Shown here one piece after another: positions 1 to 21,217 of a stretch of DNA of 64,000 nucleotides. The stretch is from Antechinus flavipes. Lineage: Eukaryota. Location of the stretch: the NCBI RefSeq assembly GCF_016432865.1, contig NC_067400.1:554466001-554530000 (forward strand). The letters are read 5' to 3'. A program made the translations under genes and the position numbers. The stretch's first letter is position 1. Every line of letters begins with the position of its first letter. Below the pieces are notes generated by a model that made no database searches, was not told where the DNA came from, and saw nothing but the letters and a program-made list of their open reading frames with translations.

Positions 1-327
1 TGCATTGCTGAATACTGAACCATAGTTTGTATCTTCCTCATGATAATGGGAGCACTCTGTTCAATGCTGGAATCTTTACCTAACATTTGAATCATGTATT
101 AGACTCTCCTCACACTGAGATCATAGACTTATCTAGTTCAACTCAATGTAATTCCTTGAAGATGGAGATTATGGTTCACCTCTCAAATTTGTAACTCCTT
201 CCTCCCTTTCTTCTTCCTTTGTACACTACTCTTAAAAGCTTTACAAAGCTTTTGTGACATGATACTGATGATTCTTTCCTCCTTCACCCATTAGATTTCT
301 GGAATGTTATGAGTATTCTGGGATGAA

Positions 328-1293
328 TCAGCTTTGGCCCTTTCTCCTTAGCAACCTAAGCATTGCTTCCCGAATGTGCTTGGACTTGACACTGTAGATG
401 ATGGGGTTGAGCACAGGGGGCACTACTAAGTAGACATAGGCAACAAAAGTATGCACAATGGGTGGTGCATTCCTACCAAAGCGGTGGATAATAGATACTC
501 CAACACCAGGAATATAGAAGACCAGAACAGCTAGAATATGGGAGACACAGGTATTAAGAGCCCGGATTCTTTCTTGAGGAGATGCTAATCCCATCACTGT
601 GTGTAATATCAGGCCATAGGATAGAGCAATTAGCAAAGAATCCAAAAATCCTGTAGACAGAACTACATAAAGCCCATAAAGTATGTTGACAGTGATGTCA
701 GCACAGGCCCTCTTCATCATGTCAGCATGAAAACAAAATGAGTGGGAAAGTTGGATTTTTTCGGGGCAGAAATTCAGTCTCTTCAGCAGGAAAGGCACAG
801 GGAAGAGAGAAACAGTAGCACGGGTCACAATAGCCATTCCAATCCTGCCAATGACACTATTGGTAAGGACAGAGGCATAACGCAATGGGTTTGAGATGGC
901 CACAAAGCGGTCAAAGGACATGGCCAGAAGCACTGAAGATTCTACAACAGAGAAGGAATGGAGGAAGAACATCTGGATCAAGCAGGCATCAAAGGCTATC
1001 CGACGATAATCAAACCAGAGCACAGCCAAGGTGGTGGGAAGTGTGCACAAAGTGAGTCCCAAGTCAGTGAGAGACAACATGGAAAGGAAGTAATACATGG
1101 GCTGGTGCAGACTGGGAGTCCTCCTCACGGCTAGTAGGATCAGGCAATTGCCTGTGAGAGCCAGAGAATACATAGAACAAAAGGGGATAGAGAGCCATCC
1201 ATGCACAGCCTCCAGTCCCGGAATGCCAATTAGCAGGAAAGCAGATGGTTGGAAGAAAGATCTGTTGTCATGGAAGTAGGGAAATGACATCAT
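328..1293 (-). CDS. Class I olfactory receptor, OR51 family (paralog A, 321 aa)
   Basis: Intact intronless ORF with OR motifs GN (TM1), LHQPMYYFLSML, MSFDRFVAISNPLRY, HSFCFH, RALNTCVSH, HRFG, PPVLNPIIYS and an N-terminal NRS sequon. The start is taken at ATG ATG (1293), not the GTG at 1338 used by the ORF track. From memory it resembles the eutherian Or51a25/Olfr559 orthogroup (unverified). Confidence 0.95.
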   Translation of the reverse strand: MMSFPYFHDNRSFFQPSAFLLIGIPGLEAVHGWLSIPFCSMYSLALTGNCLILLAVRRTPSLHQPMYYFLSMLSLTDLGLTLCTLPTTLAVLWFDYRRIAFDACLIQMFFLHSFSVVESSVLLAMSFDRFVAISNPLRYASVLTNSVIGRIGMAIVTRATVSLFPVPFLLKRLNFCPEKIQLSHSFCFHADMMKRACADITVNILYGLYVVLSTGFLDSLLIALSYGLILHTVMGLASPQERIRALNTCVSHILAVLVFYIPGVGVSIIHRFGRNAPPIVHTFVAYVYLVVPPVLNPIIYSVKSKHIREAMLRLLRRKGQS

Positions 1294-2564
1294 TGAAAGA
1301 AGGAAAGAGTCTCTCAAAAGAGTGCAGAATGGACACACAGATTCAGACAGTAGACAGACTTAATATTTACAAATTTTCATCATATATGCAGAAGGAACTG
1401 TAGACCTTTTCCTCATGTCCCAAAATGTTGAACCTTAGGTTTTAGGAAATAGTTTTACCATCCTGGTGAACAGCCATACTGCACTATATTGTTGGAGTTA
1501 TTATATGGAAGTTCTTGATAGCTATCCTAGCATAGAAAAAAAAACAAACAAACCTTGGATTAGCTCAAAACTGCTTGGTGAGCTTGTCAGAACCAGAGTA
1601 TTTTGCCAGTCATATGGAACAGCACCTGTAGACCTAATCTCAGAAATGCAGGAGCAGCTTTCTAAAAGAACTGAAACTCTGGTTTGGACCTTTTAGCAAA
1701 AAGATATTTGAAGCTCTGAGATAAGAGAAGCAAAAATAAGCACATTTTTTCCATTTGTAATGTTTAGTTGGCCTTGCTGTGAGAAACCAAATGTGGATGC
1801 ATAGTTCAGTAAATTTCTTGAGAAATGCCTGGAACAAATTAGGCATGAGCAAATGTTAAAATAATTCAATTGAGTTACCTTTCCCTCATTCTAAGCCCAC
1901 CCTATCCTGTGTTTTCATGGATCTTCTTGATAATGGTATACCACAGAACAAAGACTTATGGAATCACTAAAATAGGTAATTGTATTCACCTGTCAACATC
2001 TTATCTACAATGTTATTCACATCTATTTCCTTCTTTTCCTGTGACCATCACATTACTTCGGTCTCTCATAAACCTTTGTTTATAGTCCAAAGACTGATAA
2101 ATAGTTCCTCCACCATGAGAATGCTAAGCTAGAAGCTTTTAAATTGGACTCCCTAGGAGCCCCCAAATTTCCTGGACAATTTGCTGAATATATTTAAACT
2201 TAAATGAGAAAAAATAAATATTTTTTCAATTACTCACTGAAATTTGTATTTCTTTCAATTTGTAATTTTTTTCTGATAAGATCAGAATACTCTCAGAAAA
2301 GGCTGGAAATACTTTGATGAATTCATTCAAAACAAAATGTACTATGTATAAAATAACAATAATACTGTAAGATGATCAGCTGTGAATGATTTTGCTATCC
2401 TCAGCAATACAATGATCCAATTTGGAAAGAGTTATGATGATAAATATTATCCTTATCTGGAGAAAGAAGTGATTGTGTCTGAATGCAGAATGAAACATAC
2501 ATTTTTCAAACTTTGTTTTCCTTGAGGATGTTCTTTTGTGAGGTAAAATTGTTTTCATGTCCAA

Positions 2565-2725
2565 AAACCATGACTTTTATGGAAAAGTTCTGCATAAATT
2601 TACATGTGCCTTCTCAATGTGAGGGGTGGGGGGAGGAAAGCAGAGAATCTGGGACTCAAAATTTTAAAAACAAATGTTAAAAATTATTTTACATGTAACT
2701 GAGGAAAAATAAAATATTAAATGAA
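2565..2725 (+). mobile_element. Old marsupial L1 3' end fragment (second copy ~12520-12675)
   Basis: G-rich gaggggtggggggagg followed by ggactcaaaattttaaaaacaaatgttaaaaattattttacatgtaac...aaaataaaat, a typical marsupial L1 3'UTR terminus (from memory). Confidence 0.6.
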
Positions 2726-3834
2726 TCTAAAAAATTATTTTTGAAAATGTGTCTATAGCTTTCATTGCACTGTCAAAGACACAAATGTGCCCATGAAACA
2801 AAAAAGTTACAGAATCTCTCGTGTTGTCCATCTTGCAAATGCTCCCAGAATGATCTTAAAGATTTGACCTCATCATCCCTCAACTAACCTTCAGTGATGC
2901 CCAAAAGTATTGAAGTCCCTACACATTTTGGTCCTATTCTGCTTTCCTAGCCATCTCTTTTGTCTCTTTTACAATATTTAACAGACATGCCTTATACACA
3001 TCTTGTGAATACAGCTCTGTGTAGTTAGTGACACAGTTCTATTGATAAGGATCTCACACCAGAATTTCTTTGTATCCTAGCCTGTCTATGTTTTTTTTTG
3101 TTATTACCACTATACCTTTGACTAGACAATTCCCTATATGTGCCCTGCTCTCTTCCCTCCTATCCGTTAATCCATGGTACTCCTCTCCTTCTAAGAATTA
3201 ACTTTCCAAAAGTGCTGCCATGACTTTTTTCCAGGATTAAACATAGGACTCTAATTCAGTAAAAGCTAAGTCAAGACATTTCCTAGGGAAGAGGAGAGTC
3301 TGTCTTTCTGCAATAGAAGATTTTATTTTTTTGATTTCTCTCTTCTATACCAATCAAAATGTTTTAATTTGGAAATGACTTAAAACCCTTCCAAGTCTTA
3401 ATTCAGATTCAGATTTAGTTTTAAAATCTAAAATTTTGTGTCATTCAAATTTTTTTAGCTCCACAATTTCAAAGATTTCTCCAAACTAAACTTTCCCAGA
3501 ATGGTCATAATTGGTAGGTGGTTTAAATGGGAGTTGGTATTAGTGATTAGTATAAGGGTGGAAAAGTAAGTGGAAAATTTCCTTAGCTCTTCCCCTTATC
3601 TTTCTTTCTTTTTCTTAAAGAGGAAACCATGAATGAAGACACAGATTAAATGAAGGATGGGAGGGTGAGGAGAGATAAATACAGAAAATTTACATTCAGG
3701 AAATTTGCCTCTAAGGACAATACATTATCAAGACTGAGAAGTTACTGTGAATTGAGTCATACAGAACATTTTACATGTATCAAATATTTTATCCACTGCC
3801 AGTTCCCTTCCCTATTTCTGCATGACAAATAGTA

Positions 3835-4020
3835 ATAGTAGTAATAAAAATAATAAATAGTATATATAAAGCACTTTAAGATTTGCAAAAATGTTTCTAT
3901 ATTTATTAACTCATTTGTTTTGATGTTGATCACAACTTTGTGAAGTTAGTGCTATCATTATCTTCATTTTATAGAATATGAAATTGAAACTAGGATGTTA
4001 AATGACTTTTCCAGCATTGA
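3835..4020 (-). mobile_element. MIR-type SINE fragment (second copy ~13790-13970)
   Basis: aaagcacttt...attaactcattt...ctttgtgaagttagtgctatcattatcttcattttatagaatatgaaattgaa matches the MIR core on the reverse strand. Confidence 0.6.
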
Positions 4021-4729
4021 ACCTGTCTTCATATGTAATCTCATTGTTTCATATAATTCCTTTGGTACTTATCTTTCTCATTTGTAAAATAGGTATCATA
4101 ATAATTATTGTCCTACCTAAATTATATAATGAGAATCAGTCATGAAAATGTCTTGTAAAATTTGGTCATCTTTCTGGTTTTGTCTTTTCAATTATTATTA
4201 TGAATAGTATTCACATATTCCCTGGGTATCCCTCCTTTTCTGCATATATAGATGGGTTCAATACATTCTACTCCATTAGTCACAGAAAGTAAAAAAGGAG
4301 AAGCAGAGAGGAGAAATGGAAAGTAAGTCTGTAATCCCTACCTTTGGCCTTCACTTGTCTTCAGTGGTAGGGAGGAAAAGATTTCAAAGGAGAGGGGAAA
4401 CTAAAATGCACTAAGTACCAGATCTGCAAGAAGGAGCCAATTTGAAATACAATGTATGAATGTACGTATGTATGTATGTATTTACCTATTTATCTAGCTG
4501 TTCTTTTTTCTCTTTCCTTGGGTGCAACAAGAGATTCTTCCCTCATAGTTCTCATGAAGAATTCTAGAAGCCTAAACAGAGGAAAGGTCACCAAGAAGGG
4601 AAGGAATGGAAAAAAAAATAAAGGGGGGAAAGACTGAGGAAGGCATCAGGTGTCCAGAACTACACAAAATGGGAGATGATTGAGTCAGAAGCGAAACAAG
4701 GATGGAAAAAAAGCTTTGACTTTTGCTCA

Positions 4730-5460
4730 ATCAGCAAGCATTTTACTAAGTACTGGCTGAGCCAGTAGCTATGTCTAAATACTATGGATAAAAACTAAAA
4801 ATGGAGACCTAATTCTTTCCCTTAAATAATTCATGCTTTATTGGGGAAATAAGACACTTTCAGTGATAAGTAAATACTAAATATATGCTCTGTGTGTGTA
4901 TGTGTTTGTGTGTGTGTGTGTGTGTGGAGAAGGAAGTATTAACAATTTATAGTATTCTGAAAGGCATCTTATATTAAAGGAGAGAACTGGAGTATAGGTA
5001 ATGGTACTGGTGGTGAACAGGATAATACTATGGATTCCAACTGGCATAGATCAGGATGGAGAATATTCTAGAAATGGTGATTAGGCTATTCAAAGATAAG
5101 GCAGCTGACGGTTGAATTTTTTTTGGGGGGGGAGAATTTATAGGATACTTTGACTAGAGCACAGAAAGTGAGAGAATTAGCCAGGAGAATAATAGTGCTG
5201 TTCTTTCCAAGAAGGGGGAAGGAAAGATATTTAATGAGTTTAGGAGGAAAGATAATGAGTTCTGTTTGGGGCCTTTTGACTTTGAAATGCCCACCTTATG
5301 TTGATCTGGAAGATATGTAGAACTGCAGTTGGGGAGAGAAGGGAATCGTTGGTATATGGATTTGGGATTTTTGTGCATAGAAGGAATAGTTGAATCTATG
5401 AAGCCGTAAACAAAAAAGATCAAGATTTAAAAGTAGAAGTTCTTAAAGAAGCTCTTAAAG
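4730..5460 (-). mobile_element. L2 fragment (second copy ~14680-15410)
   Basis: caagcattttactaagtact... L2 tail, followed by the purine-rich reverse-strand L2 body (gacttttgaaatgccca...gatatgtag...tatatggatttggga). Confidence 0.5.
4890..4926. repeat. (TG)n microsatellite (second copy ~14841-14876)
   Basis: Directly visible interrupted TG run. Confidence 0.9.
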
Positions 5461-6312
5461 CTGAGCATGGATGTCCTGTACTAAAGAAAACTAGGACTCA
5501 AGGAGTACTCACAGACTGAACTTTCTGAACTATGAAGCTATCCTTGGTACTGCTAATTCAAAGTGTGACTAAGAAATGTATTTACTTTTAACTCCATGGT
5601 CCTCTGTTTCTTTTTCCATGAAGTGAATAAATTGGACTATATTCTTAAGATATGTTTTATTTTTAATAACCTAAATCCTAGCAATCATCCTTTTGAGAAA
5701 ATATGGCATTGACTATATACTCTCTTCCACCAAAACACACTTGTCCAAAAGGATCCTCCTCAAGTACTTCCTTCTTTCTGAAGAATTTGTTATAGGAAAG
5801 CTTTAGCAATAACACATAAGTGTTCAGAAGCTAAGATTTGAATATTCATGAGAAATGAACTACTGTGGAAAATGCCCTGATCTTCCAATTGGTAAAAAAA
5901 AAAAAAATTTGTCTGAACTATTTATTGATCTTATATCCTTGGGTAGATCAGTTGTTTCTGATTCTGGCTTTCCCCTTCTATAAAATGAGAACAAGATGAT
6001 CTTGTTGAGCTCTAATGTTCTACGATTCTAAGAAAAGAAGACTGAGATGGCTCATAAAGATTTTAGCTAATTTCAAGTTGTTTGGCTGGCTTTGAAGAAG
6101 AGAAATACTTGTTCCCTGCCCCTATCAGCTATCTTAGCCACCTATTCACTATCTACTACTTCAATTGATTGCCTTCATAAGACTCACAGATTGCACATTG
6201 GAATAGGTGTTCCAAAATATAAGACCATGTTTCTGGTAAGAGCAGTCTGTGGGTCATATGAAGGCAATAAATTGTAGCCCACTTTTGATTACACTGAACT
6301 GTATTATCTAAA

Positions 6313-6542
6313 CAAAGAGTTCTTAATCTGGGATATACTAACTCCCTAGGATTTTGGATATAGATCTCAGGGCATCTATGAATTTGAATAGGAAAAACGC
6401 ATTTTCATTTAAAGATAATTGATTTTCTTTGGAATTGTGAATTTTATTTTATACCTTTAAAAAGAATCAAGTTCTTCCACAGGTTTCACCGAACCACTAA
6501 AAGAGTCCATGAGATTTTTAAAAAAGAGTTTAAGGGTCTCTG
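6313..6542. mobile_element. hAT-Charlie/MER5-like MITE (second copy 16291-16520)
   Basis: Degenerate inverted ends caaagagttcttaatctggg ... gagtttaagggtctctg; internal ccacaggtttcacc...gagtccatga. Confidence 0.55.
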
Positions 6543-8869
6543 ATAAATACCTTAGTATTTATCTAGTTGCTATTTTCTATCAATTCTTTTTTGTCACAAA
6601 AGCCTTCATCAAGTTTAGGGCCAAGGGCCTGAGGAAAATATCTGATAGAGATTCCTTGTTTATGAGTAGTTCTTGTTAGAGAAGGTACTAAACCAAGTGC
6701 CAAAGAAGGAAGTATCAGGAAGAACCAATGAAATTAGTTTATTTTCCATAAATTTCAAGTATCTAACCCTACTATTCTGGAATAATGAAAACAGAGCTAA
6801 TGAAATCTGTACATTATGTTACTAACCTCAGTTTTTACATAACAGTTGAATTCTTCAGTTCAGTCTCATGTTGTCATGGGCTCAGTTAATAGGTCTATTC
6901 TGCCTATCCCTTATAACTCTGCCTAGGAAAACCTTCATGAAATCTCCTGGCCCCTGGAGATTAAAGAGCTCTAGGACGCGAATCTCTGACTATTTTAAGG
7001 TCTCAGAGATTATGCTGTCTACTTAGCCATTTATGGATGTTTTCAGGTGGGAATAGAATTCAGGTGGAGAATTCAGAAGGACTCTAGAATGAGGAAGGTG
7101 TTAAAAAGGTTGTTGCATTTGTGTTTTCAGTGCTTAATACAATATTTGACACATATAAGCATCTAGCATAACTTTTTATTTGTTTTATTTATTTATTTTC
7201 TCACTAGTTATATGGTCACTTAGAAAAACCCTCTGGATTCAGGGTGGGAGGAGAAAATCTGAATTTTTGAAGGATAGATCAATGAATCACTCAAGCAATC
7301 AATCTTTTCTGAATGCCTTGGAGACCTATCCTTGTTTTCCATCATCAAAGGCAATATAGGGACTATATGAAACCTGTCTTCAGGCTCTCTAGTCTTTCAT
7401 AGCATTCGACATTACTCTCAAAGCCTCTAATTTGACCAACCCTTTTTATTACGTAGAGTCTCTCTGGAAGTTTTTAGGATCAATGGATCAGAGATATTCT
7501 TGTTATTAATCTCTACTTTGCACTTCAATGGATTTTTCTTCAGGGAAAAGTTTTCATGGAGTAAAGATCACAAGATGAAAGGCATCCCTAATTCCTGAGT
7601 TCAGACTTGTGTTGAATGGGGTAGTCTTACTGATGGGGTAATAATGGCATGTGTCTAATTTTACCTACCAAATCAGTTAGAAAAAAAAGAGGAAAGAACT
7701 ATGGAAGATTTTTTTGACTTCATTGGCTAGATGTCTCAATATATCACATTGGAAGAGTATTAGATTTTTGTAATTCATAAATGAATCTTGGCTTGATTCC
7801 TTAAGGTTACCAGTTCTGGAATCTATTCAGTCCAATTTAATTCAATTCATCAAGTATTTATTAAGTACCCATTATGTAAAGAGTTTGCTAAACATTTGGG
7901 TTTATAAAGACACAAAAGAGAATCCGTACCCTGAAGTAACATACATTTTTATTTGATACAGGCTCATACATCTGGAACTAGAAGAGACATTAAAGATTAT
8001 CTCCCTCAATCGTCTCATTTCCAGATGAGGAAATTGACCATTAGTGAGATTAAGTGACTTTTCTAAAGTAATATGGTAGTGACTGAGAGATCTGGAATTT
8101 GAACCCCAGATTACAACTTCAGTGTTCTTCCTGCCACATCACTGAATCCCTTAAGATTATTTAGAAATAGTATTTTAACACCAGTGATTTCATTGGCCAA
8201 GTAAATGCAAGTTCTATGACTTCTTGGCATATGCACATAAATTAGGAGATTATTTTTCTTTTGTAAATATAATTGTTGCCCTTAGTTCTTGTAGAAGGCT
8301 GAAATGACATCATTATTTTAGAGTTAATGAATGTACAGTAGCTAATGGTGGGCTGATCTAACCAATACAATATCAGAATGCTCTACCACAGTTTGGCTAC
8401 AAATAGTCCACGGGCTATTTGACAATGTCTCCAAATTTGAGCATCTCACATTTCTTTTGAGCTATTGCAGTTCTATATTGTTCATGGAACAGTGTTCTAC
8501 CAAACCTTGGGACAGCTCAGCTGTGAGGAAGAAGGTGCTAGAAAAGAGGGTACATGCTAGAGTGATAATTCTCCACTGATAAGAAAGTTTGGGTAGGGGG
8601 AATACAGAAGAAAGTACTGTCGTGTGTTGGGACTTAGGAAATAGTACTAGTTAGACCTCTAAAACCATATAGTGGTGTGTCAACAGAACAAGCACACTAA
8701 TCGTGTGGACATTCCTTCATAAGTTTCAGGATTTAGTGAAGTCATGTTGGTCAATTAATTACTCATAATAATAATGAAAATTAATGCTTATAAACTCTTT
8801 ATGGTTAGAAAACATATCACATATGACATCTCATAATAGTCTCCGAGAAAAAGTATGAAACAAGTCTGT

Positions 8870-9597
8870 AAATTGTGCATACCATTTGAGCCAGCAGTCT
8901 TTACTAGATCTGTATTTCAAAGAGATCATAAAAAGGAAAAAAAAATCTACATGTGCAAAAATGTTTGCAGGAGCCCTTTTTGTAAGTAGAATGAAACTGG
9001 AAACTGAGTGGAGACCCATTAGTTGTGGTATAGCTCAATCAGTTGTGGTATATGAATGTAATGGAATATTTTTATTCTATAAGAAATGATGAGCAGGTTG
9101 ATTTCAGAAAAGCCTGAAAAGATATACATGAACTGATCATAATGAAGTGAGTAGAACCAAGAGAACATTGTACACAGCAACAAGAAGATTATGTGATGAT
9201 CAATTTTGATGGACTTGGATTTTTTTTAATAATGAGGTGATTTAAGGCCGTTCCAATAGACTTGTAATGGAAAGAGCTATTCCCATCCAGAGAGAGAACT
9301 ATGGAGACTGAATGCGGATCAAAGCATAGCATTTTCACCTTTGTTCTTGTTGTTTGTTTTTTACTTTCTCATTTTTTTTCCTTTTTGTCTGATTTTCGTT
9401 GTGCAGCATGACAAATTTGGAAATATTTTTAGAAGAATTGCACATGTTTGACCTATATACAGCCTAGGGAAAAGGATAGGGAGAAGGGAAGGAGAAAAAT
9501 TTAGAAGACAAAGTTTTGTAAGGGTCAATGTTTAACAGTGTCTTTGCATGTATTTTGAAAAATAGAAAGTTTTTATTAAAAAAGAAAAAGTAGAAAA
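8870..9597 (+). mobile_element. L1 fragment (ORF2 C-terminus remnant plus 3'UTR)
   Basis: Translates as TCAKMFAGALFVSRMKLETEWRPIS...VVYECNGI (L1 ORF2 Cys-rich C-terminal remnant), then a marsupial L1 3'UTR and A-rich end. Confidence 0.9.
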
Positions 9598-10274
9598 CAT
9601 GAAACCTGAAGAATCTTGTGAATGTAGTATGAATGTGTGTGTTATTAGTTCTACTTTTTAGATGCAAAAAGAAAGACCAAAAGAATTTATGGGTCCTATG
9701 TAAAATCACATACCTAGGTAACAGCAGTTTCTTGAGCCTTTGAGAATTCTGTCTTCAAGTCTAATTTTACTGCCACAATACTGTGCTATCTTTCTTCTTC
9801 ATGCTAATAGGAACATAACTTTTTACACTAGAGTCAGTATTCTCTATCTGATACATTTATTGTGCAATCGTTATCACATCAGGCTAATAGAATAGTATGT
9901 ACTTACCTCTTTTTTATATACCATTTTAAGATTTACAATGTATTCTTCATTTATTTTGTTATTATTGTCTTATAAAATGTGTTATTATTAATTTCATTTG
10001 AAGTGGAAAAACTGAGGGTAGAGGAGACTCCAAGCCCAGAACTTTATCCATACTGGGATGGGACTTCAAAAAAATCTAATTCTAACCACTGAACTTTCAT
10101 GAGAATGAGCACTATCTCACCTCTAGTTTGACATCTCTTCCCTTCAATATCTATATATTAAAGGCTTTGTCAAAACAAATTCACTTTGTTTATGATTATG
10201 ACTATACTCATAGTTCCCACCCAATCTCAACCATCATTAATTTCCTGAGATCCCAGAACTATTGCCTAAAGAAA

Positions 10275-11240
10275 TTAACTTTGACCTTTTCTCCTTAGCA
10301 ACCTAAGCATTGCCTCCCGAATGTGCTTGGACTTGACACTGTAGATGATGGGGTTGAGCACAGGGGGCACGATTAGGTATACATATGCTACAAAGGCATG
10401 CACAATTGGGGGCGCATGCTTACCAAAGCGATGGATAATGGACACTCCAATAACTGGAATATAGAAGACCAGAACAGCTAGAATATGGGAGACACAAGTG
10501 TTGAGAGCCCGGATTCTTTCTTTAGGAGAAGCCAAACCCATCACTGTGTGTAATATCAGGCCATAGGATAGAGCAATTAGCAAAGAATCCAAAAATCCTG
10601 TAGACAGAACTACATAAAGCCCATAAAGTATGTTGACAGTGATGTCAGCACAGGCCTTCTTCATCATGTCAGCATGAAAACAGAATGAGTGGGAAAGTTG
10701 GATTTTTTCGGGGCAGAAATTCAGTCTCTTCAGCAGGAAAGGCACAGGGAAGAGAGAAACAGTAGCACGGGTCACAATAGCCATTCCAATCCTGCCAATG
10801 ACACTATTGGTAAGGACAGAGGCATAACGCAATGGGTTTGAGATGGCCACAAAGCGGTCAAAGGACATGGCCAGAAGCACTGAAGATTCTACAACAGAGA
10901 AGGAATGGAGGAAGAACATCTGGATCAAGCAGGCATCAAAGGCTATCCGACGATAATCAAACCAGAGCACAGCCAAGGTGGTGGGAAGTGTGCACAAAGT
11001 GAGTCCCAAGTCAGTGAGAGACAACATGGAAAGGAAGTAATACATGGGCTGGTGCAGACTGGGAGTCCTCCTCACGGCTAGTAGGATCAGGCAATTGCCT
11101 GTGAGAGCCAGAGAATACATAGAACAAAAGGGGATAGAGAGCCATCCATGCACAGCCTCCAGTCCCGGAATGCCAATTAGCAGGAAAGCAGATGGTTGGA
11201 AGAAAGATCTGTTGTCATGGAAGTAGGGAAATGACATCAT
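10275..11240 (-). CDS. Class I olfactory receptor, OR51 family (paralog B, 321 aa; chimera of A and C)
   Basis: Same OR motifs. The N-terminus through TM5 matches paralog A (2 differences seen); ICL3 through the C-terminus and the 3' flank match paralog C. Confidence 0.95.
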   Translation of the reverse strand: MMSFPYFHDNRSFFQPSAFLLIGIPGLEAVHGWLSIPFCSMYSLALTGNCLILLAVRRTPSLHQPMYYFLSMLSLTDLGLTLCTLPTTLAVLWFDYRRIAFDACLIQMFFLHSFSVVESSVLLAMSFDRFVAISNPLRYASVLTNSVIGRIGMAIVTRATVSLFPVPFLLKRLNFCPEKIQLSHSFCFHADMMKKACADITVNILYGLYVVLSTGFLDSLLIALSYGLILHTVMGLASPKERIRALNTCVSHILAVLVFYIPVIGVSIIHRFGKHAPPIVHAFVAYVYLIVPPVLNPIIYSVKSKHIREAMLRLLRRKGQS

Positions 11241-14200
11241 TGAAAGAAGGAAAGTGTCTCTCAAAAGGGTGCAGAATGGACACACAGATTCAGACAGTAG
11301 ACAGACTTAATATTTACAAATTTTCATCATATATGCAGAAGGAACTGTAGACCTTTTCCTCATGTCCCAAGATGTTGAACCTTAGGTTTTAGGAAATAGT
11401 TTTACCATCCTGGTGAACAGCCATACTGTACTATATTGTTGGAGTTATTATATGGAAGTTCTTGATAGCTATCCTAGCATAGGAAAAAAAAAAACAAACC
11501 TTGGATTAGCTCAAAACTGCTTGGTGAGCTTGTCAGAACCAGAGTATTTTGCCAGTCATATGGAACAGCACCTGTAGACCTAATCTCAGAAATGCAGGAG
11601 CAGCTTTCTAAAAGAACTGAAACTCTGGTTTGGACCTTTTAGCAAAAAGATATTTGAAGCTCTGAGATAAGAGAAGCAAAAATAAGCACATTTTTTCCAT
11701 TTGTAATGTTTAGTTGGCCTTGCTGTGAGAAACCAAATGTGGATGCAGAGTTCAGCAAATTTCTTGAGAAATGCCTGGAACAAATTAAGCATGAGCAAAT
11801 GTTAAAATAATTCAATTGAGTTACCTTACCTTTCCCTCATTCTAAGCCCACCCTATCCTGTGTTTTCATGGATCTTCTTGATAATGGTATACCACAGAAC
11901 AGAGACTTATGGAATCACTAAAATAGATAATTTTATTCACCTGTCAACATCATATCTACAATGTTATTCACATCTGTTTCCTTCTTTTCCTGTGACCATC
12001 ATATTACTTCAGGCTCTCCCAAACCTTTGTTTGGACTGATAAATAGTTCCTCCACCATGAGAATGCTAAACTAGAAGCTTTTAAATTGTACTCCCTAAGA
12101 GCCCCAAAATTTCCTAGACAGATTTGCTGAATGTATTTGAATTTAAATGAGAAAAAATAAATATTTTTTCAATTACTCACTGAAATTTGTATTTCTTTCA
12201 ATTTGTAATTTTTTTTCTAATAAGATCAGAATACTCTCAGAAAAGCCTGGAAATACTTTGATGAATTCATTCAAAGCAAAATGTACTATGTATAAAATAA
12301 CAATAATACTGTAAGATGATCAGCTGTGAATGATTTTGCTATCCTCAGCAATACAATGATCCAAGACAATTTGGAAAGAGTTATGATGATAAATATTAAC
12401 CTTATCTGGAGAAAGAAGTGATTGTGTCTGAATGCAGAATGAAACATACATTTTTCAAACTTTGTTTTCCTTGAGGATGTTCTTTTGTGAGGTAAAATTG
12501 TTTTCATGTCCAAAAACCATGACTTTTATGGAAAAGTTCTGCATAAATTTACATGTGCCTTCTCAATGTGAGGGGTGGGGGGAGGAAAACAGAGAATCTG
12601 GGACTCAAAATTTTAAAAACAAATGTTAAAAATTATTTTACATGTAACTGAGGAAAAATAAAATATTAAATGAATCTAAAAAATTATTTTTGAAAATGTG
12701 TCTATAGCTTTCATTGCACTGTCAAAGACACAAATGTGCCCATGAAACAAAAAAGTTACAGAATCTCTCGTGTTGTCCATCTTGCAAATGCTCCCAGAAT
12801 GATCTTAAAGATTTGACCTCATCATCCCTCAACTAACCTTCAGTGATGCCCAAAAGTATTGAAGTCCCTACACATTTTGGTCCTATTCTGCTTTCCTAGC
12901 CATCTCTTTTGTCTCTTTTACAATATTTAACAGACATGCCTTATACACATCTTGTGGATACAGCTCTGTGTAGTTAGTGACACAGTTCTATTGATAAGGA
13001 TCTCACACCAGAATTTCTTTGTATCCTAGCCTGTCTATGTTTTTTTTGTTATTATCACTATACCTTTGACTAGGCAATTCCCTATATGTGCCCTGCTCTC
13101 TTCCCTCCTATCCATTAATCCATGGTACTCCTCTCCTTCTTCTAAGAATTAACTTTCCAAAAGTGCTGCCATGACTTTTCTCCAGGATTAAACATAGGAC
13201 TCTAATTCAGTAAAAGTTAAGTCAAGACATTTCCTAGGGAAAAGGAGAGTCTGTCTTTCTGCAATAGAAGATTTTATTTTTTGATTTGTCTCTTCTATAC
13301 CAATCAAAATGTTTTAGTTTAGAAATGACTTAAAACCCTTCCAAGTCTTAATTCAAATTCAGATTTAGCTTTAAAATCTAAAATTTTGTGTCATTCAAAT
13401 TTTTTTAGCTCCACAATTTCAAAGATTTCTCCAAACTAAACTTTCCCAGAATGGTCATAATTGGTAGGTGGTTTAAATGGGAGTTGGTATTAGTGATTAG
13501 TATAAGGGTGGAAAAGTAAGTGGAAAATTTCCTTAGCTCTTCCCCTTATCTTTCTTTCTTTTTCTTAAAGAGGAAACCATGAATGAAGACACAGATTAAA
13601 TGAAGGATGGGAGGGTGAGGAGAGATAAATACAGAAAATTTACATTCAGGAAATTTGCCTCTAAGGACAATACATTATCAAGACTGAGAAGTTACTGTGA
13701 ATTGAGTCATACAGAATCATTTTACATGTGTCAAATATTTTATCCACTGTCAGTTCCCCTCCCTATTTCTGCATGACAAATAGTAATAGTAGTAATAAAA
13801 ATAATAAATAGTATATATAAAGCAGTTTAAGATTTGCAAAAATGTTTCTATATGTATTAACTCATTTGTTTTGATGTTGATCACAACTTTGTGAAGTTAG
13901 TGCTATCATTATCTTCATTTTATAGAATATGAAATTGAAGCTAGGATGTTAAATGACTTTTCCAACATTGAACCTGTCTTCATATGTAATCTCATTGTTT
14001 CATATAATTCCTTTGGTACTTATCTTTCTCATTTCTAAAATAGGTATCATAATAATTATTGTCCTACCTAAATTATATAATGAGAATCAGTCATGAAAAT
14101 GTCTTGTAAAATTTGGTCATCTTTCTGGTTTTGTCTTTTCAATTATTATTATGAATAGTATTCACATCTTCCCTGGGTATCCCTCCTTTTCTGCATATAG

Positions 14201-14840
14201 AGATGGGTTCAATACATTCTACTCCATTAGTCACAGAAAGTAAAAAAGGAGAAGCAGAGAGGAGAAATGGAAAGTAAGTCTGTAATCCCTACCTTTGGCC
14301 TTCACTTGTCTTCAGTGGTAGGGAGGAAAAGATTTCAAAGGAGAGGGGAAACTAAAATGCACTAAGTACCAGTTCTGCAAGAAGGAGCCAATTTGAAATA
14401 CAATGTATGAATGTACGTATGTATGTATGTATTTACCTATTTATCTAGCTGTCCTTTTTTCTCTCTCCTTAGGTGCAACAAGAGATTCTTCCCTCATGGT
14501 TCTCATGAAGAATTCTAGAAGCCTAAACAGAGGAAAGGTCACCAAGAAGGGAAGGAATGGAAAAAAAAATAAAGGGGGGAAAGACTGAGGAAGGCATCAG
14601 GTGTCCAGAACTACACAAAATGGGAGATGATTGAGTCAGAAGCGAAACAAGGATGGAAAAAAAGCTTTGACTTTTGCTCAATCAGCAAGCATTTTACTAA
14701 GTACTGGCTGAGCCAGTAGCTATGCTAAATACTATGGATAAAAACTAAAAAGGGAGACCTAATTCTTTCCCTTAAATAATTCATGCTTTATTGGGGAAAT
14801 AAGACACTTTCAGTGATAAGTAAATACTAAATATATGCTC

Positions 14841-14875
<35 letters not shown>

Positions 14876-15839
14876 GGAGAAGGAAGTATTAACAATTTAT
14901 AGTATTCTGAAAGGCATCTTATATTAAAGGAGAGAACTGGAGTATAGGTACTGGTACTGGTGGTGAACAGGATAATACTATGGATTCCAACTGGCATAGA
15001 TCAGGATGGAGAATATTCTAGAAATGGTGATTAGGCTATTCAAAGATAAGGCAGCTGAAGGTTGAATTTTTTGTTTGGGGGAGAATTTATAGGATACTTT
15101 GGCTAGAGCACAGAAAGTGAGAGAATCAGCCAGGAGAATAATAGTGCTATTCTTTCCAAGAAGGGGGAAGGAAAGATATTTAATGAGTTTAGGAGGAAAG
15201 ATAATGAGTTCTGTTTGGGGCCTTTTGACTTTGAAATGCCCACCTTATGTTGATCTGGAAGATATGTAGAACTGCAGTTGGGGAGAGAAGGGAATCGTTG
15301 GTATATGGATTTGGGATTTTTGTGCATAGAAGGAATAGTTGAATCTATGAAGCCGTAAACAAAAAAGATCAAGATTTAAAAGTAGAAGTTCTTAAAGAAG
15401 CTCTTAAAGCTGAGCATGGATGTCCTGTACTAAAGAAAACTAGGACTCAAGGAGTACTCACAGACTGAACTTTCTGAACTATGAAGCTATCCTTGGTACT
15501 GCTAATTCAAAGTGTGACTAAGAAATGTATTTACTTTTAACTCCATGGTCCTCTGTTTCTTTTTCCATGAAGTGAATAAATTGGACTATATTCTTAAGAT
15601 ATGTTTTATTTTTAATAACCTAAATCCTAGCAATCATCCTTTTGAGAAAATATGGCATTGACTATATACTCTCTTCCACCAAAGCACACTTGTCCAAAAG
15701 GATCCTCCTCAAGTACTTCCTTCTTTCTGAAGAATTTGTTATAGGAAAGCTTTAGCAATAACACATAAGTGTTCAGAAGCTAAGATTTGAATACTCATGA
15801 GAAATGAACTACTGTGGAAAATGCCCTGATCTTCCAATT

Positions 15840-15842
<3 letters not shown>

Positions 15843-15885
<43 letters not shown>
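15843..15885 (+). repeat. Poly(A)43 tract
   Basis: 43 consecutive A; the paralogous site 5894-5907 has 14. Confidence 0.9.
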
Positions 15886-15889
<4 letters not shown>

Positions 15890-18844
15890 TTTGAACTATT
15901 TATTGATCTTATATCCTTGGGTAGATCAGTTGTTTCTGATTCTGGCTTTCCCCTTCTATAAAATGAGAACAAGATGATCTTGTTGAGCTCTAATGTTCTA
16001 TGATTCTAAGAAAAGAAGACTGAGATGGCTCATAAAGATTTTAGCTAATTTCAAGTTGTTTGGCTGGCTTTGAAGAAGAGAAATACTTGTTCCCTGCCCC
16101 TCTCAGCTATCTTAGCCACCTATTCACTATCTACTACTTCAATTGATTGCCTTCATAAGACTCACAGATTGCACATTGGAATAGGTGTTCCAAAATATAA
16201 GACCATGTTTCTGGTAAGAGCAGTCTGTGGGTCATATGAAGGCAATAAATTGTAGCCCACTTTTGATTACACTGAACTGTATTATCTAAACAAAGAGTTC
16301 TTAATCTGGGATATACTAACTCCCTAGGATTTTGGATATAGATCTCAGGGCATCTATGAATTTGAAAAGGAAAAATGCATTTTCATTTAAAGATAATTGA
16401 TTTTCTTTGGAATTGTGAATTTTATTTTATACCTTTAAAAAGAATCAAGTTTTTCCACAGGTTTCACCGAACCACTAAAAGAGTCCATAAGATTTTTAAA
16501 AAAGAGTTTAAGGGTCTCTGATAAATACCTTAGTATTTATCTAGTTGCTATTTTCTATCAATTCTTTTTTGTCACAAAAGCCTTCATCAAGTTTAGGGCC
16601 AAGGGACTGAGGAAAATATCTGATAGAGATTCCTTGTTTATGCGTAGTTCTTGTTAGAGAAGGTACTAAACCAAGTGCCAAAGAAGGAAGTATCAGGAAG
16701 ATCCAATGAAATTAGTTATTTTCCATAAATCTCAAGTATCTAATCCTACTATTCTGGAATAATGAAAACAGAGCTAATGAAATCTGTGCATTATGTTACT
16801 AACCTCAGTTTTTACATAACAGTTGAATTCTTCAGTTCAGTCTCATGTTGTCATGGGCTCAGTTAATAGGTCTATTCTGCCTATCCCTTATAACTCTGCC
16901 TACTAAAACCTTCATGAAATCTCCAAGCCCCTGGAGATTAAAGACCTCTAGGATGCAAATCTCTATTTTTAAGGTCTCAGAGATTATGCTGTCTACTTAG
17001 CCATTTATAGATGTTTTCAGGTGGGAATAGAATTCAGGTGGAGAATTCAGAAGGACTCTAGAATGAGGAAGGTGTTAAAAAGGTTGTTGCATTTGTGTTT
17101 TCAGTGCTTAATACAATATTTGACACATATAAGCATCTAGCATAACTTTTTATTTGTTTTATTATTTATTTTCTCACTAGTTATATGGTCACTTAGTAAC
17201 AACCTTCTGGATTCAGGGTGGGAGGAGAAAATCTGAATTTTTGAAGGATAGATCAATGAATCACTCAAGCAATCAATCTTTTCTGAATGCCTTGGAGACT
17301 TATCCTTGTTTTCCATCATCAAAGGCAATATAGGGACTATATGAAACCTGTCTTCAGGCTCTCTAATCTTTCATAGCATTCGACATTACTCTCAAAGCCT
17401 CTAATTTGACCAACCCTTTTTATTACGTAGAGTCTCTCTGGAAGTTTTTAGGATCAATGGATCAGAGATATTCTTGTTATTAATCTCTACTTTGCACTTC
17501 AATGGATTTTTCTTCAAGGAAAAGTTTTCATGGAGTAAAGATCACAAGGTGGAAGGCATCCCTAATTCCTGAGTTCAGACTTGTGTTGAATGGGGTAGTC
17601 TTACTGATGGGGTAATAATGGCATGTGTCTAATTTTACCTACCAAATCAATTAGAAAAAAAGAGGAAAGAACTATGGAAGATTTTTGAAAAAAATCTTGA
17701 GATTTTTTTGACCTCATTGGCTAGATGTCCCAGTATATCATGTTGGAAGAGTGTTAGATTTTTATAATTCATAAGTGAATCTTGGCTTGATTCCTTAAGG
17801 TTACCAGCCCTGGAATGTATTCAGTCCAATTTAATTCAATTCATCAAGTATTTATTAAATACCCATTAAGTAAAGAGTTTGCTAAGCATTTGGGTTTATA
17901 AAGACACAAAAGAGAATCCCTACCCTGAAGTAATATACATTTTTATTTGATACAGGTTCATACATCGGGAGCTAGAAGAGACATTCAAGATTATCTCCCT
18001 CAGTCATCTCATTTACAGATGAGGAAATTGATTATTAGAGAGATTAAGTGACTTTTCTAAAGTAATATGGTAGTGACTGAGAGATCTGGAATTTGAACCC
18101 CAGATTACAAGTTCAGTGTTCTTCCTGTCACATCATTGAGTCCCTTAAGATTATTTAAAAATAGTATTTTAACACCAGTGACTTCACTGGCCAAGTAAGT
18201 TCTATGACTTCTTGAGATATGCACATAAATTAGGAGATTATTTTTCTTTTGTAAATATAATCGTTGCCCTTAGTTCTTGTAGAAGGCTGAAATGACATCA
18301 TTATTTTAGAGTGAATGTACAGTAGCTAATGGTGGCTGCTCTAACCAATACAATCTCAAAATGCTCTACCACAGTCTGGCCACAAATAGTCCATGGGCTA
18401 TTTGAAAATGTCTCTAAATTTGAGCATCTCACATTTCTTTTGAGCTATTGCAATTCTATATTGTTCATGGAACAGTGTTCTACCACACCTTGAGACAGCT
18501 CAGCTGTGAGGAAGAAGGTCCTAGAAAAGAGGGTACATGCTAGAGTGATAATTCTTCATTGATAAGAAAGTTTGGGTAGGGGGAATACAGAAGAATACAC
18601 ACTGTCGTGTGTTGGGACTTAGGAAATAGTACTAGTTAGACCTCTAAAACCATATAGTGGTGTGTCAACAGAACAAGCATACTAATCATGTTGACATTCC
18701 TTGATAAGTTTCAGGATTTAGTGAAGTCATGTTGGCCAATTAATTACTCAGAATAATAATGAAAATTAATGCTTATAAACTCTTTATGGTTAGAAAACAT
18801 ATCACATATGACATCTCATAACTGTCTCAAAGAAAAATATGAAA

Positions 18845-19567
18845 TGAAGTGCATACCATTTGAGCCAGCAGTCTTAACTAGATCTGTATTCCAAAGAGAT
18901 CATAAAAAGGAAAAAAAAACTACATGTGCAAAAATATTTGCAGGAGCCCTTTTTGTAAGTAGAAAGAAACTGGAAACTGAGTGGAATCCCATTAGTTGTG
19001 GTATAGCTCAATCAGTCGTGGTATATGAATGTAATGGAATATTTTTATTCTATAAGAAATGATGAACAGTTTGATTTCAGAAAAGCCTGAAAAGATATAC
19101 ATGAACTGATCATAATGAAGTGAGTAGAACCAAGAGAACATTGTACACAGCAACAAGAAGATTATGTGATGATCAATTTTGATGGACTTGGATTTTTTTT
19201 AATAATGAGGTGATTTAAGGCAGTTCCAATAGACTTGTAATGGAAAGAGCTATTCCCATCCAGAGAGAAAACTATGGAGACTGAATGTTGATCAAAACAT
19301 AGCATTTTCACCTTTGTTCTTGTTGTTTGTTTTTTTCTTTCTCATTTTTTTTCTTTTTGTCTGATTTTCATTGTGCAGCATGACAAATTTGGAAATATTT
19401 TTAGAAGAATTGCACATGTTTGACCTATATACAATCTAGGGAAAAGGGTAGGGAGAAGGGAAGGAGAAAAATTTAGAAGATAAAGTTTTGTAAGGGTCAA
19501 TGTTTAACAGTATCTTTGCATGTATTTTGAAAAATAAAAAGCTTTTATTAAAAAAGAAAAAGTAGAA
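18845..19567 (+). mobile_element. L1 fragment (duplicate of 8870-9597)
   Basis: Same L1 ORF2 and 3'UTR remnant within duplication unit 2. Confidence 0.9.
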
Positions 19568-20251
19568 AACATGAAACCTGAAGAATCTTGTGAATGTAGT
19601 ATGAATGTGTGTGTTATTAGTTCTACTTTTTAGATGCAAAAAGAAAGACCAAAAGGAATTTATGGGTCCTATGTAAAATCACATACCTAGGTAACAGCTG
19701 TTTCTTGAGCCTGTGAGAATTCTGTCTTCAAGTCTAATTTTACTGCCACAATACTGTGCTATCTTTCTTCTTCATGCTAATAGGAACATAACTTTTTACA
19801 CTAGAGTCAGTATTCTCTACCTGATACATTTATTGGGTAATTGTTATCACATCAGGCTATATAATAGAATAGTATGTACTTACCTCTTTTTTATATACCA
19901 TTTTAAGATTTACAATGTATTCTTCATTTATTTTGTTATTATTGTCTTATAAAATGTGTTATTATTAATTTCATTTGAAATGGAAAAACTGAGGGTAGAG
20001 GAGACTCCAAGCCCAGAACTTTATCCATACTGGGATGGGACTTCAAAAAAATCTAATTCTAACCACTGAACTTTCATGAGAATGAGCACTATCTCACCTC
20101 TAGTTTGACATCTCTTCCCTTCAATATCTATATATTAAAGGCTTTGCCAAAACAAATTCACTTTGTTTATGATTATGACTATACTCATAGTTCCCACCCA
20201 ATCTCAACCATCATTAGTTTCCTGAGATCCCAGAACTATTGCCTAAAGAAA

Positions 20252-21217
20252 TTAACTTTGACCTTTTCTCCTTAGCAACCTAAGCATTGCCTCCCGAATG
20301 TGCTTGGACTTGACACTGTAGATGATGGGGTTGAGCACAGGGGGCACGATTAGGTATACATATGCTACAAGGGCATGCACAATTGGGGGCGCATGCTTAC
20401 CAAAGCGATGGATAATGGACACTCCAATAACTGGAATATAGAAGACCAGAACAGCTAGAATATGGGAGACACAAGTGTTGAGAGCCCGGACTCTTTCTTT
20501 AGGAGAAGCCAAACCCATCACAGTGTATAATATCAGGCCATAGGAGAGGGCAATTAGCAGGGAATCCACAACTGCAGTGGATACTACTACATAGAGTCCA
20601 TATAGGATGTTGACAGTGATGTCAGCACAGGCCCTCTTCATCATGTCAGCATGAAAGCAGAATGAATGTGAAAGCTGGACTTTCTCAGGGCAGAAATTCA
20701 GTCTCTTCAGCAGGAAAGGCACAGGGAAGAGAGAAACAGTAGCACGGGTCACAATAGCCATTCCAATCCTGCCAATGACACTGTTGGTAAGGACAGAGGC
20801 ATAACGCAATGGGTTTGAGATGGCCACAAAGCGGTCAAAGGACATGGCCAGAAGCACTGAAGATTCTACAACAGAGAAGGAATGGAGGAAGAACATCTGG
20901 ATCAAGCAGGCATCAAAGGCTATCCGACGATAATCAAACCAGAGCACAGCCAAGGTGGTGGGAAGTGTGCACAAAGTGAGTCCCAAGTCAGTGAGAGACA
21001 ACATGGAAAGGAAGTAATACATGGGCTGGTGCAGACTGGGAGTCCTCCTCACGGCTAGTAGGATCAGGCAATTGCCTGTGAGAGCCAGAGAATACATAGA
21101 ACAAAAGGGGATAGAGAGCCATCCATGCACAGCTTCCAGTCCCGGAATGCCAATCAGCAGGAAAGCAGATGGTTGGAAGAAAGATCTGTTGTTATGAGAT
21201 TGTGGAAGCGACATCAT
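20252..21217 (-). CDS. Class I olfactory receptor, OR51 family (paralog C, 321 aa)
   Basis: Intact ORF starting MMSLPQSHNNRSFFQ with all OR motifs. TM5 (VVSTAVVD) and the 5' flank differ from A and B. Confidence 0.95.
   Translation of the reverse strand: MMSLPQSHNNRSFFQPSAFLLIGIPGLEAVHGWLSIPFCSMYSLALTGNCLILLAVRRTPSLHQPMYYFLSMLSLTDLGLTLCTLPTTLAVLWFDYRRIAFDACLIQMFFLHSFSVVESSVLLAMSFDRFVAISNPLRYASVLTNSVIGRIGMAIVTRATVSLFPVPFLLKRLNFCPEKVQLSHSFCFHADMMKRACADITVNILYGLYVVVSTAVVDSLLIALSYGLILYTVMGLASPKERVRALNTCVSHILAVLVFYIPVIGVSIIHRFGKHAPPIVHALVAYVYLIVPPVLNPIIYSVKSKHIREAMLRLLRRKGQS

What the first reader, a model, noticed from the sequence alone, without database searches (positions are those of the whole stretch)
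10275..11240. Middle OR is an in-frame chimera created by unequal crossover; breakpoint resolved to ~8 bp
From 10545 upward (TM5 back to the ATG and ~10 kb of 5' flank), paralog B matches paralog A: only 2 CDS differences were seen, one giving R>K in MMKKAC. From 10536 downward (ICL3, TM6, TM7, C-terminus and 3' flank) it matches paralog C (gccaaac, caagtgttgagagc, ttaactttgacc) and not A (gctaatc, caggtattaagag, tcagctttggcc). The switch lies in cccatcac (10537-10544). This is the expected product of non-allelic recombination between ancestral A and C, which also duplicated the spacer. B pairs A-type TM5 (LSTGFLD) with C-type TM6/TM7 (IPVIG...GKH, HAFV). That is a TM5/TM6/TM7 combination found in neither parent, so altered odorant tuning is possible (inference).
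Basis: partly seen in the sequence, partly recalled or inferred. Interest (0 to 1): 0.75.

Follow-up and report, generated by a model that had tools for sequence, protein, structure and literature searches.

The report
Chimeric smell-receptor gene from unequal exchange
The middle of three neighbouring smell-receptor genes in this antechinus is a real front-of-A, back-of-C hybrid sitting at the joint of a 10-kb tandem duplication that the Tasmanian devil lacks. This is a clean example of a known way in which receptor families grow, though its history is messier than one recent crossover.

Summary
Three intact OR51I2-like genes lie on the minus strand about 9.95 kb apart: A 328-1293, B 10275-11240, C 20252-21217.

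- **Switch.** In the 991-nt block shared by all three there are 74 informative sites. B is A-like at 39 of 41 sites above 10545 and C-like at 31 of 33 from 10536 down. Max chi-square is 58.7, reached by 0 of 20,000 permutations. The switch lies in 10537-10544.
- **Flanks.** B's 5' flank copies A's for about 9 kb. B's 3' flank copies C's.
- **Outgroup.** The Tasmanian devil has one unit only (C-spacer-A), so the extra unit arose on the antechinus side.
- **Reads.** A 176-nt short-read contig from the closest run bridges the joint with no mismatch, so B is not an assembly splice.

- The two spacer copies are a mosaic. About 81% differs by 1.5%. Two patches differ by 5.4%, as much as antechinus differs from devil. 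In one patch another species' contig groups with one copy only.
- The array is therefore old and has evolved in concert, so the 8-bp switch may be a conversion-tract edge.
- The same type of TM5/TM6-7 pairing already occurs in devil, bilby and Dromiciops relatives.
- All eight OR51E2 ligand-contact positions are identical in A, B and C.

This is a new member of a known kind (compare human OR8U8 + OR8U9 giving OR8U1). The scan noted a similar conversion mosaic elsewhere in this genome (s1-193731).

The parts
328..1293 (-). Paralog A, an intact OR51I2-like class I olfactory receptor. It is the parent of B's 5' part and the ortholog of devil P0122.
10275..11240 (-). Paralog B, the chimeric gene. 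It is intact: 321 aa from the first ATG, and 320 aa from the ATG at 11237 in the public gene model.
20252..21217 (-). Paralog C, an intact OR51I2-like receptor. It is the parent of B's 3' part and the positional ortholog of devil P0002.
10545..11263 (-). A-type part of B: 5' leader, N-terminus and TM1-TM5. 39 of 41 informative sites are A-like.
10537..10544 (-). Switch interval (cccatcac on +), in codons V232-G234 at the cytoplasmic end of TM5, equivalent to OR51E2 residues 224-226.
10273..10536 (-). C-type part of B: ICL3, TM6, TM7, C-terminus and stop. 31 of 33 informative sites are C-like.
10711..11157 (-). Tract homogenised among A, B and C (0-2 differences in 447 nt). It equals A 764-1210 and C 20688-21134. 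The 350-nt identical A-C run inside it is never reached in 200,000 permutations.
1317..10272 (.). Spacer copy S2, between B and A.
11264..20249 (.). Spacer copy S1, between C and B.
7578..9053 (.). Old patch 1 in S2 (equals S1 17552-19026). The two copies are about 5% apart and equidistant from the devil sequence.
1939..2187 (.). Old patch 2 in S2 (equals S1 11890-12130). A contig from organism B shares derived states with S2, not with S1.

Best explanation
B is the recombinant joint gene of a tandem duplication made by unequal, homology-guided exchange between two older paralogs, C (upstream) and A (downstream). The exchange put A's promoter side, N-terminus and TM1-TM5 in front of C's ICL3, TM6, TM7 and 3' flank. 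It left C-spacer-B-spacer-A. This happened on the antechinus side after, or close to, the split from the Tasmanian devil lineage.

The array did not stay still afterwards. Gene conversion or further unequal exchange re-homogenised most of the two units and the central part of all three genes. Two unconverted old patches remain. The sharp switch at 10537-10544 therefore marks the last exchange boundary. That is either the founding crossover or the edge of a later conversion tract.

Shown: the chimeric pattern, the tandem structure, the single unit in the devil, the joint in reads, and the mosaic ages. Inferred: the molecular route, the order of events, and that B works as a receptor.
For: - **One sharp switch.** 74 informative sites, max chi-square 58.7, 0 of 20,000 permutations.
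- **Flanks.** 326-11263 aligns with 10273-21240. A-C homology ends at the CDS edges, so B's 5' flank equals A's and B's 3' flank equals C's.
- **Outgroup structure.** In the devil the 369-aa OR is followed by two genes only, about 9 kb apart, with nothing called in the next 10 kb. Window 31098-10279 and window 11263-158 both align collinearly to the one devil unit.
- **Both parental types are old.** In the N-terminal and TM6-7 segments A groups with devil dA and C groups with devil dC.
- **B's parts are antechinus-derived.** B shares derived bases with A (11178, 10710, 10680) and with C (10413, 10395) that the devil orthologs lack.
- **Joint in reads.** In run X1 a 176-nt contig covers 10484-10656 with 0 mismatches, 53 and 112 nt either side of the switch. 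Every 31-mer of such a contig comes from reads (inference from how such contigs are built).
- **Flank copies in reads.** X1 contigs match B-adjacent copy-specific bases in both flanks.
- **Mosaic history.** The dispersion index of copy divergence is 3.8-5.9, against 0.82 for antechinus-devil divergence. Old patches: 5.44% between copies, 5.35% to devil. The rest: 1.47% and 5.39%.
- **Patch 2.** The X3 contig carries five S2-derived characters: two substitutions, a 9-nt insertion, and 5-nt and 1-nt deletions.
- **Concerted evolution in the genes.** At five sites in the homogenised tract every antechinus copy differs from both devil copies.
Against: - The switch sits in an 8-bp island inside about 85%-identical sequence. 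That is not typical of classical NAHR, which usually resolves in long identical tracts (119 bp for OR8U1, PMC2570968).
- Run X1 may come from the individual that was assembled, so it is not clearly independent.
- No long read or contig links both flanks through B.
- An old duplication predicts B in other antechinus-like species. Runs X3, X7 and X8 showed only A-type contigs or none at the joint, and X3 showed no S1-type copy in patch 2. That needs loss in those lineages or non-detection, and contigs cannot prove absence.
- There is no RNA or ligand evidence that B is expressed or functional.
Confidence: 0.82

Rival explanations
1. A single, clean, recent NAHR event. One crossover between A and C made B and both spacer copies at once, and everything since is ordinary point mutation. 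The 8-bp interval is the crossover point.
For: The geometry fits. About 81% of the spacer differs by a fairly even 1.1-2.0%. B's two halves differ from their parents by only 3 of 719 and 2 of 272 sites. Organism B (run X3) shows no B-specific contig, and its gene-to-flank depth ratio is about 2, against about 1.55 in X1 (depth is weak evidence).
Against: Two patches (1673 aligned nt) differ by 5.44%, equal to the antechinus-devil distance, with symmetric private changes of 46 and 45. Total divergence to devil is normal there, so hypermutation is excluded. In patch 2, S1 keeps the ancestral state at five characters that S2 shares with another species. That cannot happen if S1 was copied from S2's lineage after the two species split.
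Confidence: 0.15
2. Assembly artefact. Only C and A exist, and the assembler placed two haplotypes in tandem or looped through the shared gene sequence.
For: The 447-nt tract identical in all copies could create a graph loop. No single read or contig seen here spans both flanks. X1 may be the source sample.
Against: The switch lies 165 nt outside the identical tract. B-specific 31-mers are present in short-read contigs with 0 mismatches. The copies differ by 1.5-5.4% with many indels, far above allelic levels expected for a mammal (the expectation is from general knowledge). Both copy-specific flank versions occur in X1 contigs. The region 1-32000 has no gap.
Confidence: 0.03
3. The duplication predates the antechinus-devil split. 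The devil's two-gene state is then secondary, produced by a deletion that fused C with an ancestral B. That would explain why the devil's C-position gene has a C-type head, an A-type TM5 and a C-type TM6-7.
For: Old patches are as diverged as the two species. Devil dC is C-type to 10689, A-type from 10629 to 10497, and C-type from 10455, so its A-to-C switch lies within about 40-90 nt of B's.
Against: The devil is equidistant from S1 and S2 in the patches (46 against 45), with no sign of orthology to one copy. The devil's A-type tract is identical to dA, including devil-specific bases at 10611 and 10517, as expected for a recent conversion within the devil. The switch points differ by seven informative sites. 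B shares antechinus-derived bases with A and with C.
Confidence: 0.1

Closest known systems
Human OR8U8 + OR8U9 giving OR8U1, a chimeric OR made by NAHR (Hasin et al. 2008, PMC2570968; read)
   Same: Two tandem, same-orientation OR paralogs recombined inside the coding region. The product is an in-frame hybrid receptor, and the authors suggested it may have new odorant-binding properties.
   Different: OR8U1 is the deletion product, so the parents are lost on that allele. It is polymorphic in humans, and its exchange interval is a 119-bp identical stretch. Here the product is the duplication one, with both parents retained beside the hybrid. The switch is an 8-bp island, and the array has since evolved in concert.
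Haemoglobin anti-Lepore and red/green opsin hybrid genes (textbook knowledge, not checked here)
   Same: Unequal crossover between tandem paralogs yields parent-hybrid-parent arrays with a hybrid coding region and a duplicated spacer.
   Different: Those are human polymorphisms or disease alleles with a known phenotype. This case is a species-level, probably million-year-old arrangement with no functional data.
Interlocus gene conversion and concerted evolution in OR clusters (scan note s1-193731 for this genome; devil dC tract here)
   Same: The central 447 nt of A, B and C, and a tract of about 130-230 nt in the devil's C-position gene, are conversion mosaics. Most of the two spacers are homogenised as well.
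   Different: Conversion alone changes no copy number and leaves the recipient's flanks in place. B's C-type sequence runs on into a whole duplicated spacer.
OR51E2 and consOR51 cryo-EM structures (8F76, 8UXV)
   Same: B aligns over its full length (332 and 433 bits). All eight OR51E2 propionate-contact positions are conserved in position and identical among A, B and C.
   Different: B carries Ala where OR51E2 has Q181 and Val where it has I202. Its ligands are unknown.

Membership tests
Class I (OR51-type) olfactory receptor | Pfam 7tm_4 match above the gathering score over the whole domain | tested here: met
   E = 5.4e-114, 381 bits, profile positions 1-280 of 280
Class I (OR51-type) olfactory receptor | Intact single-exon ORF of about 320 aa whose closest relatives are named OR51 | tested here: met
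   ORF 10275-11285. The best named hits are OR51I2-like marsupial proteins at 88-97% identity. consOR51 scores 433 bits.
Class I (OR51-type) olfactory receptor | Expression in olfactory neurons and a response to odorants | not testable with these tools
   No listed run is on record as RNA
Chimeric joint gene of an unequal-crossover (NAHR) tandem duplication | Parents in direct orientation on either side of the hybrid | tested here: met
   C, B and A all lie on the minus strand at spacings of 9977 and 9947 nt
Chimeric joint gene of an unequal-crossover (NAHR) tandem duplication | A single switch of parental informative sites, in register and in frame | tested here: met
   39/2 then 2/31 sites; 0 of 20,000 permutations; the 991-nt alignment has no gaps
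Chimeric joint gene of an unequal-crossover (NAHR) tandem duplication | Each flank of the hybrid matches the corresponding flank of a different parent | tested here: met
Chimeric joint gene of an unequal-crossover (NAHR) tandem duplication | An outgroup keeps the unduplicated two-gene state | tested here: met
   Devil locus L001/L002
Chimeric joint gene of an unequal-crossover (NAHR) tandem duplication | The joint is present in sequencing reads | tested here: met
   X1 contig 10484-10656 has 0 mismatches. Whether X1 is independent of the assembled individual is not established.
Chimeric joint gene of an unequal-crossover (NAHR) tandem duplication | The exchange point lies inside a long tract of perfect identity | tested here: not met
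   Only 8 bp are identical at the switch. The nearest long tract (10711-11157) is 165 nt away. This leaves the mechanism or a later conversion edge open, but it does not affect the chimeric status.
Chimeric joint gene of an unequal-crossover (NAHR) tandem duplication | Even divergence between the two units, as expected from one event | tested here: not met
   Dispersion index 3.8-5.9. Patches differ by 5.44% and the rest by 1.47%.
Pure interlocus gene-conversion mosaic | The donor-type tract is bounded on both sides by recipient-type sequence, with no copy-number change | tested here: not met
   C-type sequence continues through the stop codon into about 9 kb of duplicated spacer. The feature is met for devil dC.
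False duplication in the assembly | Near-allelic identity of the copies and a joint absent from reads | tested here: not met

The most novel reading that the evidence does not exclude
The same kind of receptor, pairing an A-type (GFL) TM5 with a C-type (VIG...KH...LIV) TM6-7, was made twice in dasyurids by different routes: unequal exchange in the antechinus (B) and a short conversion tract in the devil's C-position gene. Either this pairing is favoured by selection, or the TM5/ICL3 boundary is a recombination hot spot in this OR51 array. A bolder version is that the array predates the split and the devil gene is the reciprocal C-B fusion.
Probability: 0.12. Interest if true: 0.5.

Novelty: new member of a known kind. 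Interest (0 to 1): 0.3.

Why it matters
The locus gives a natural domain-swap triplet in the one OR family with solved structures. A, B and C are identical through TM1-TM4 and at every OR51E2 contact position. They differ only in TM5 (5.44, 5.47-5.49, 5.63), ICL3, TM6 (6.51, 6.52), ECL3 and TM7 (7.35, 7.36, 7.43). Side-by-side assays could therefore separate the TM5 contribution to tuning from the TM6-7 contribution without any engineering.

It also documents gene birth by unequal exchange and later concerted evolution in one 21-kb array, with a dated outgroup. It does not change how OR families are thought to evolve.

Tried and rejected
- **Bilby outgroup.** Fetching the bilby locus (P0004) to polarise spacer changes found no record. 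The devil branch and the antechinus stem could therefore not be separated, and a faster antechinus clock could not be tested.
- **Absence of B in other species.** Logan contigs showed only A-type or no contigs at the joint in X3, X7 and X8. Contigs drop variants and the tool filters records, so I do not claim absence.
- **Contig depth as copy number.** In X1 the part shared by all three genes has depth about 79 and the flanks about 50. In X3 the values are about 50 and 20-28. The tool warns against this use, so I cite it only as weak evidence.
- **Hypermutation in the old patches.** Rejected, because divergence to devil is the same inside and outside them (5.35% and 5.39%).
- **Conversion from a dispersed repeat as the source of the old patches.** Rejected, because the other copies of that repeat in the window are only about 78% identical. 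Private changes are also symmetric between S1 and S2.
- **Devil dC as a relic of an ancestral B.** Considered and ranked low.
- **Word searches of earlier findings.** These returned an error or nothing.
- **N runs.** The runs at 33989-34143 and 51689-51846 were left untouched.

Full report
**What is there**

The window holds five intact olfactory receptor genes on the minus strand. All match Pfam 7tm_4. Three of them are near-copies: A (328-1293), B (10275-11240) and C (20252-21217). Their best named relatives are marsupial "olfactory receptor 51I2-like" proteins. The proteins encoded here lie on a 636.7-Mb contig of the same length as one carrying an Antechinus flavipes protein. An earlier scan note also calls this genome the yellow-footed antechinus. 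Positions 1-32000 contain no N. The two N runs further on were left alone.

**Checking the observation**

- Self-comparison aligns 326-11263 with 10273-21240. This is a tandem unit of 9947-9977 nt present 2.1 times.
- A and C resemble each other only from 23 nt upstream of the ATG to 2 nt past the stop (326-1316 against 20250-21240). Their outer flanks are unrelated.
- In this 991-nt gap-free three-way block there are 74 sites where A and C differ and B matches one of them. From 11263 to 10545, 39 are A-like and 2 are C-like. From 10536 to 10273, 2 are A-like and 31 are C-like.
- Maximum chi-square is 58.7, reached by none of 20,000 permutations. Fisher p is 3.8e-16.
- The switch lies in 10537-10544 (cccatcac on +), in codons V232-G234 of the 320-aa protein.
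A and B differ at two CDS sites upstream of the switch: 10683, and 10657 which gives R194K.

**Origin**

The Tasmanian devil locus was fetched through two devil proteins. It has the 369-aa OR, then two genes about 9 kb apart, and nothing called in the next 10 kb. At the DNA level (about 93% identity), window 31098-10279 and window 11263-158 both align collinearly to the single devil unit. The devil therefore has C-spacer-A and the antechinus has C-spacer-B-spacer-A.

With the devil genes as outgroup:
- A groups with devil dA and C groups with devil dC, both in the N-terminal segment and in the TM6-7 segment. Both parental types are thus older than the species split.
- B lies 1-2 differences from A in the 5' segments and 2 differences from C in the 3' segment. 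It lies 26-31 differences from the other parent.
- B shares derived bases with A (11178, 10710, 10680) and with C (10413, 10395) that the devil orthologs lack. Its two halves therefore come from antechinus-lineage A and C.

This is the geometry expected for the duplication product of an unequal exchange between A on one chromatid and C on the other.

**Is it an assembly artefact?**

- In the closest run (X1, organism A, possibly the source sample) a 176-nt contig covers 10484-10656 without a mismatch. It has 53 and 112 nt on either side of the switch.
- My inference from how such contigs are built is that every 31-mer in them occurs in reads. The joint-specific words, which neither A nor C can supply, are therefore real.
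- X1 contigs also match the B-adjacent copy-specific bases in both flanks.
- The switch lies 165 nt outside the 447-nt tract that is identical in all three genes, so a graph loop through that tract cannot explain it.
- No record seen here spans both flanks. Long reads remain the decisive test.

**The history is not one clean event**

- The two spacer copies differ by 2.27% (K2P), against 5.5-5.7% to the devil. Private changes are balanced at 91 and 105.
- The differences are strongly clumped. The dispersion index is 3.8-5.9 (p about 4e-13). Antechinus-devil differences are Poisson-like, with an index of 0.82.
- Two patches differ by 5.44% between copies: S2 7578-9053 (S1 17552-19026) and S2 1939-2187 (S1 11890-12130). 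That is as much as either copy differs from the devil (5.35%). The counts are 46 S1-private, 45 S2-private and 44 devil-side changes.
- The remaining 7148 nt differ by 1.47% between copies, with the same distance to devil of 5.39%. The total rate is therefore normal in the patches, and only the coalescence is deep.
- In patch 2, the single 874-nt contig of another organism (X3) carries five S2-derived characters: bases at 12011 and 12013, the same 9-nt insertion, and a 5-nt and a 1-nt deletion. It carries ancestral bases at the S1-private sites. S1 there split off before that species separated from the window's species.
- In a young block the opposite is seen at 9711. S1 and S2 share a derived base that X3, X7 and the devil lack.
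- The genes show the same process. A, B and C are identical over 10711-11157 apart from 10806 (B coordinates), where C differs from A and B. The 350-nt identical A-C run is never reached in 200,000 permutations. At five sites in that tract all antechinus copies differ from both devil copies.
- The devil's C-position gene has its own A-type tract (10629-10497). It is identical to dA, including devil-specific bases, so it is an independent recent conversion.

The most coherent reading is an early duplication on the antechinus side followed by concerted evolution. B's present near-identity to its parents, about a quarter of the antechinus-devil distance, would then date the last homogenisation rather than the founding event. 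The weak point is that X3, X7 and X8 showed no B-specific contig and X3 showed no S1-type patch. That means either loss in those lineages or non-detection.

**Mechanism at the switch**

The 8-bp island lies in sequence where A-type and C-type differ at about 15% of sites. The human OR8U1 hybrid resolved in a 119-bp identical stretch (PMC2570968). Three routes fit and cannot be told apart here:
- exchange started in the neighbouring 447-nt identical tract, with heteroduplex repair beyond it;
- the edge of a later conversion tract;
- a template switch guided by the paralogous alignment.

**Function**

B is intact. Its two private coding changes are conservative: R194K, and L282F, which converges on A's residue.

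B was aligned to OR51E2 (8F76; chain index minus 10 gives native numbering, anchored on G198, Y217, S258, R262 and Y291). The published propionate contacts are H104, F155, L158, Q181, G198, I202, S258 and R262 (bioRxiv 10.1101/2022.12.20.520951). These fall on B residues 111, 162, 165, 189, 206, 210, 266 and 270. None of them differs in protein among A, B and C.

The residues that do differ map to 5.44, 5.47-5.49 and 5.63, to ICL3, to 6.51 and 6.52, to ECL3, and to 7.35, 7.36 and 7.43. These are second-shell or classical pocket-floor positions. A change in tuning is possible but not indicated.

The pairing of a GF-type TM5 with a VIG-type TM6-7 is not new among marsupials. Devil P0002, bilby P0004 and Dromiciops P0006 have the same type of pairing. 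A's TM6-7 (PGVGV, GRN, LVV) looks like the derived state, shared with devil dA. No RNA run was listed.

**Comparison and verdict**

- This is the duplication-side counterpart of OR8U8 + OR8U9 giving OR8U1. From textbook knowledge it also parallels haemoglobin anti-Lepore and the opsin hybrids.
- No paper in the library describes it for Antechinus.
- B's protein is already in public databases as a predicted gene.
- It is a new member of a known kind, well supported as a chimera. Its history involves concerted evolution rather than one recent crossover.
- Interest is modest. Its main value is as a natural TM5 versus TM6-7 swap in a structurally solved OR family.

Noticed in passing
L001:10001-10963 (devil gene P0002), B-equivalent sites 10629-10497: The devil's C-position gene carries an A-type tract of about 130-230 nt across TM5 and ICL3. 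The tract is identical to the devil A ortholog, including devil-specific bases. This is an independent interlocus conversion that gives the same type of TM5/TM6-7 pairing as antechinus B.
   Followed up: partly
window 30326-31435 (-) and L001:1-773: The OR with the long Ser/Thr-rich C-terminal tail is 369 aa here. The devil gene model at the same position is also listed as 369 aa, so the extension appears conserved in dasyurids.
   Followed up: partly
window 8909-9578, 12259-12392, 12527-12660: Contig depth is 10^4 to 7x10^5 in all four runs. These are high-copy interspersed repeats inside the spacer. Copies elsewhere in the window (32609-33134, 43703-44226) are about 78% identical.
   Followed up: no
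window 10394 (B residue 282): B alone has T (Phe) where C and devil dC have C (Leu), although the neighbouring sites 10395 and 10397 are C-type. This is a private change in B that recreates A's residue at TM7 position 7.36.
   Followed up: partly
window 9847-9869: Four changes private to S2 lie within 23 nt (9847, 9863, 9865, 9869). Runs X3 and X7, copy S1 and the devil all lack them. This is probably one complex mutation in B's 3' flank.
   Followed up: no
window 326-1316 vs 20250-21240; devil 9975-10965 vs 19967-20957: Homology between the two old paralogs stops within a few bases of the start and stop codons in both species. This suggests that repeated conversion confined to the coding region has kept otherwise unalignable loci similar.
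   Followed up: partly
window 33989-34143 and 51689-51846: Two N runs of 155 and 158 nt. They were left as they are.
   Followed up: no
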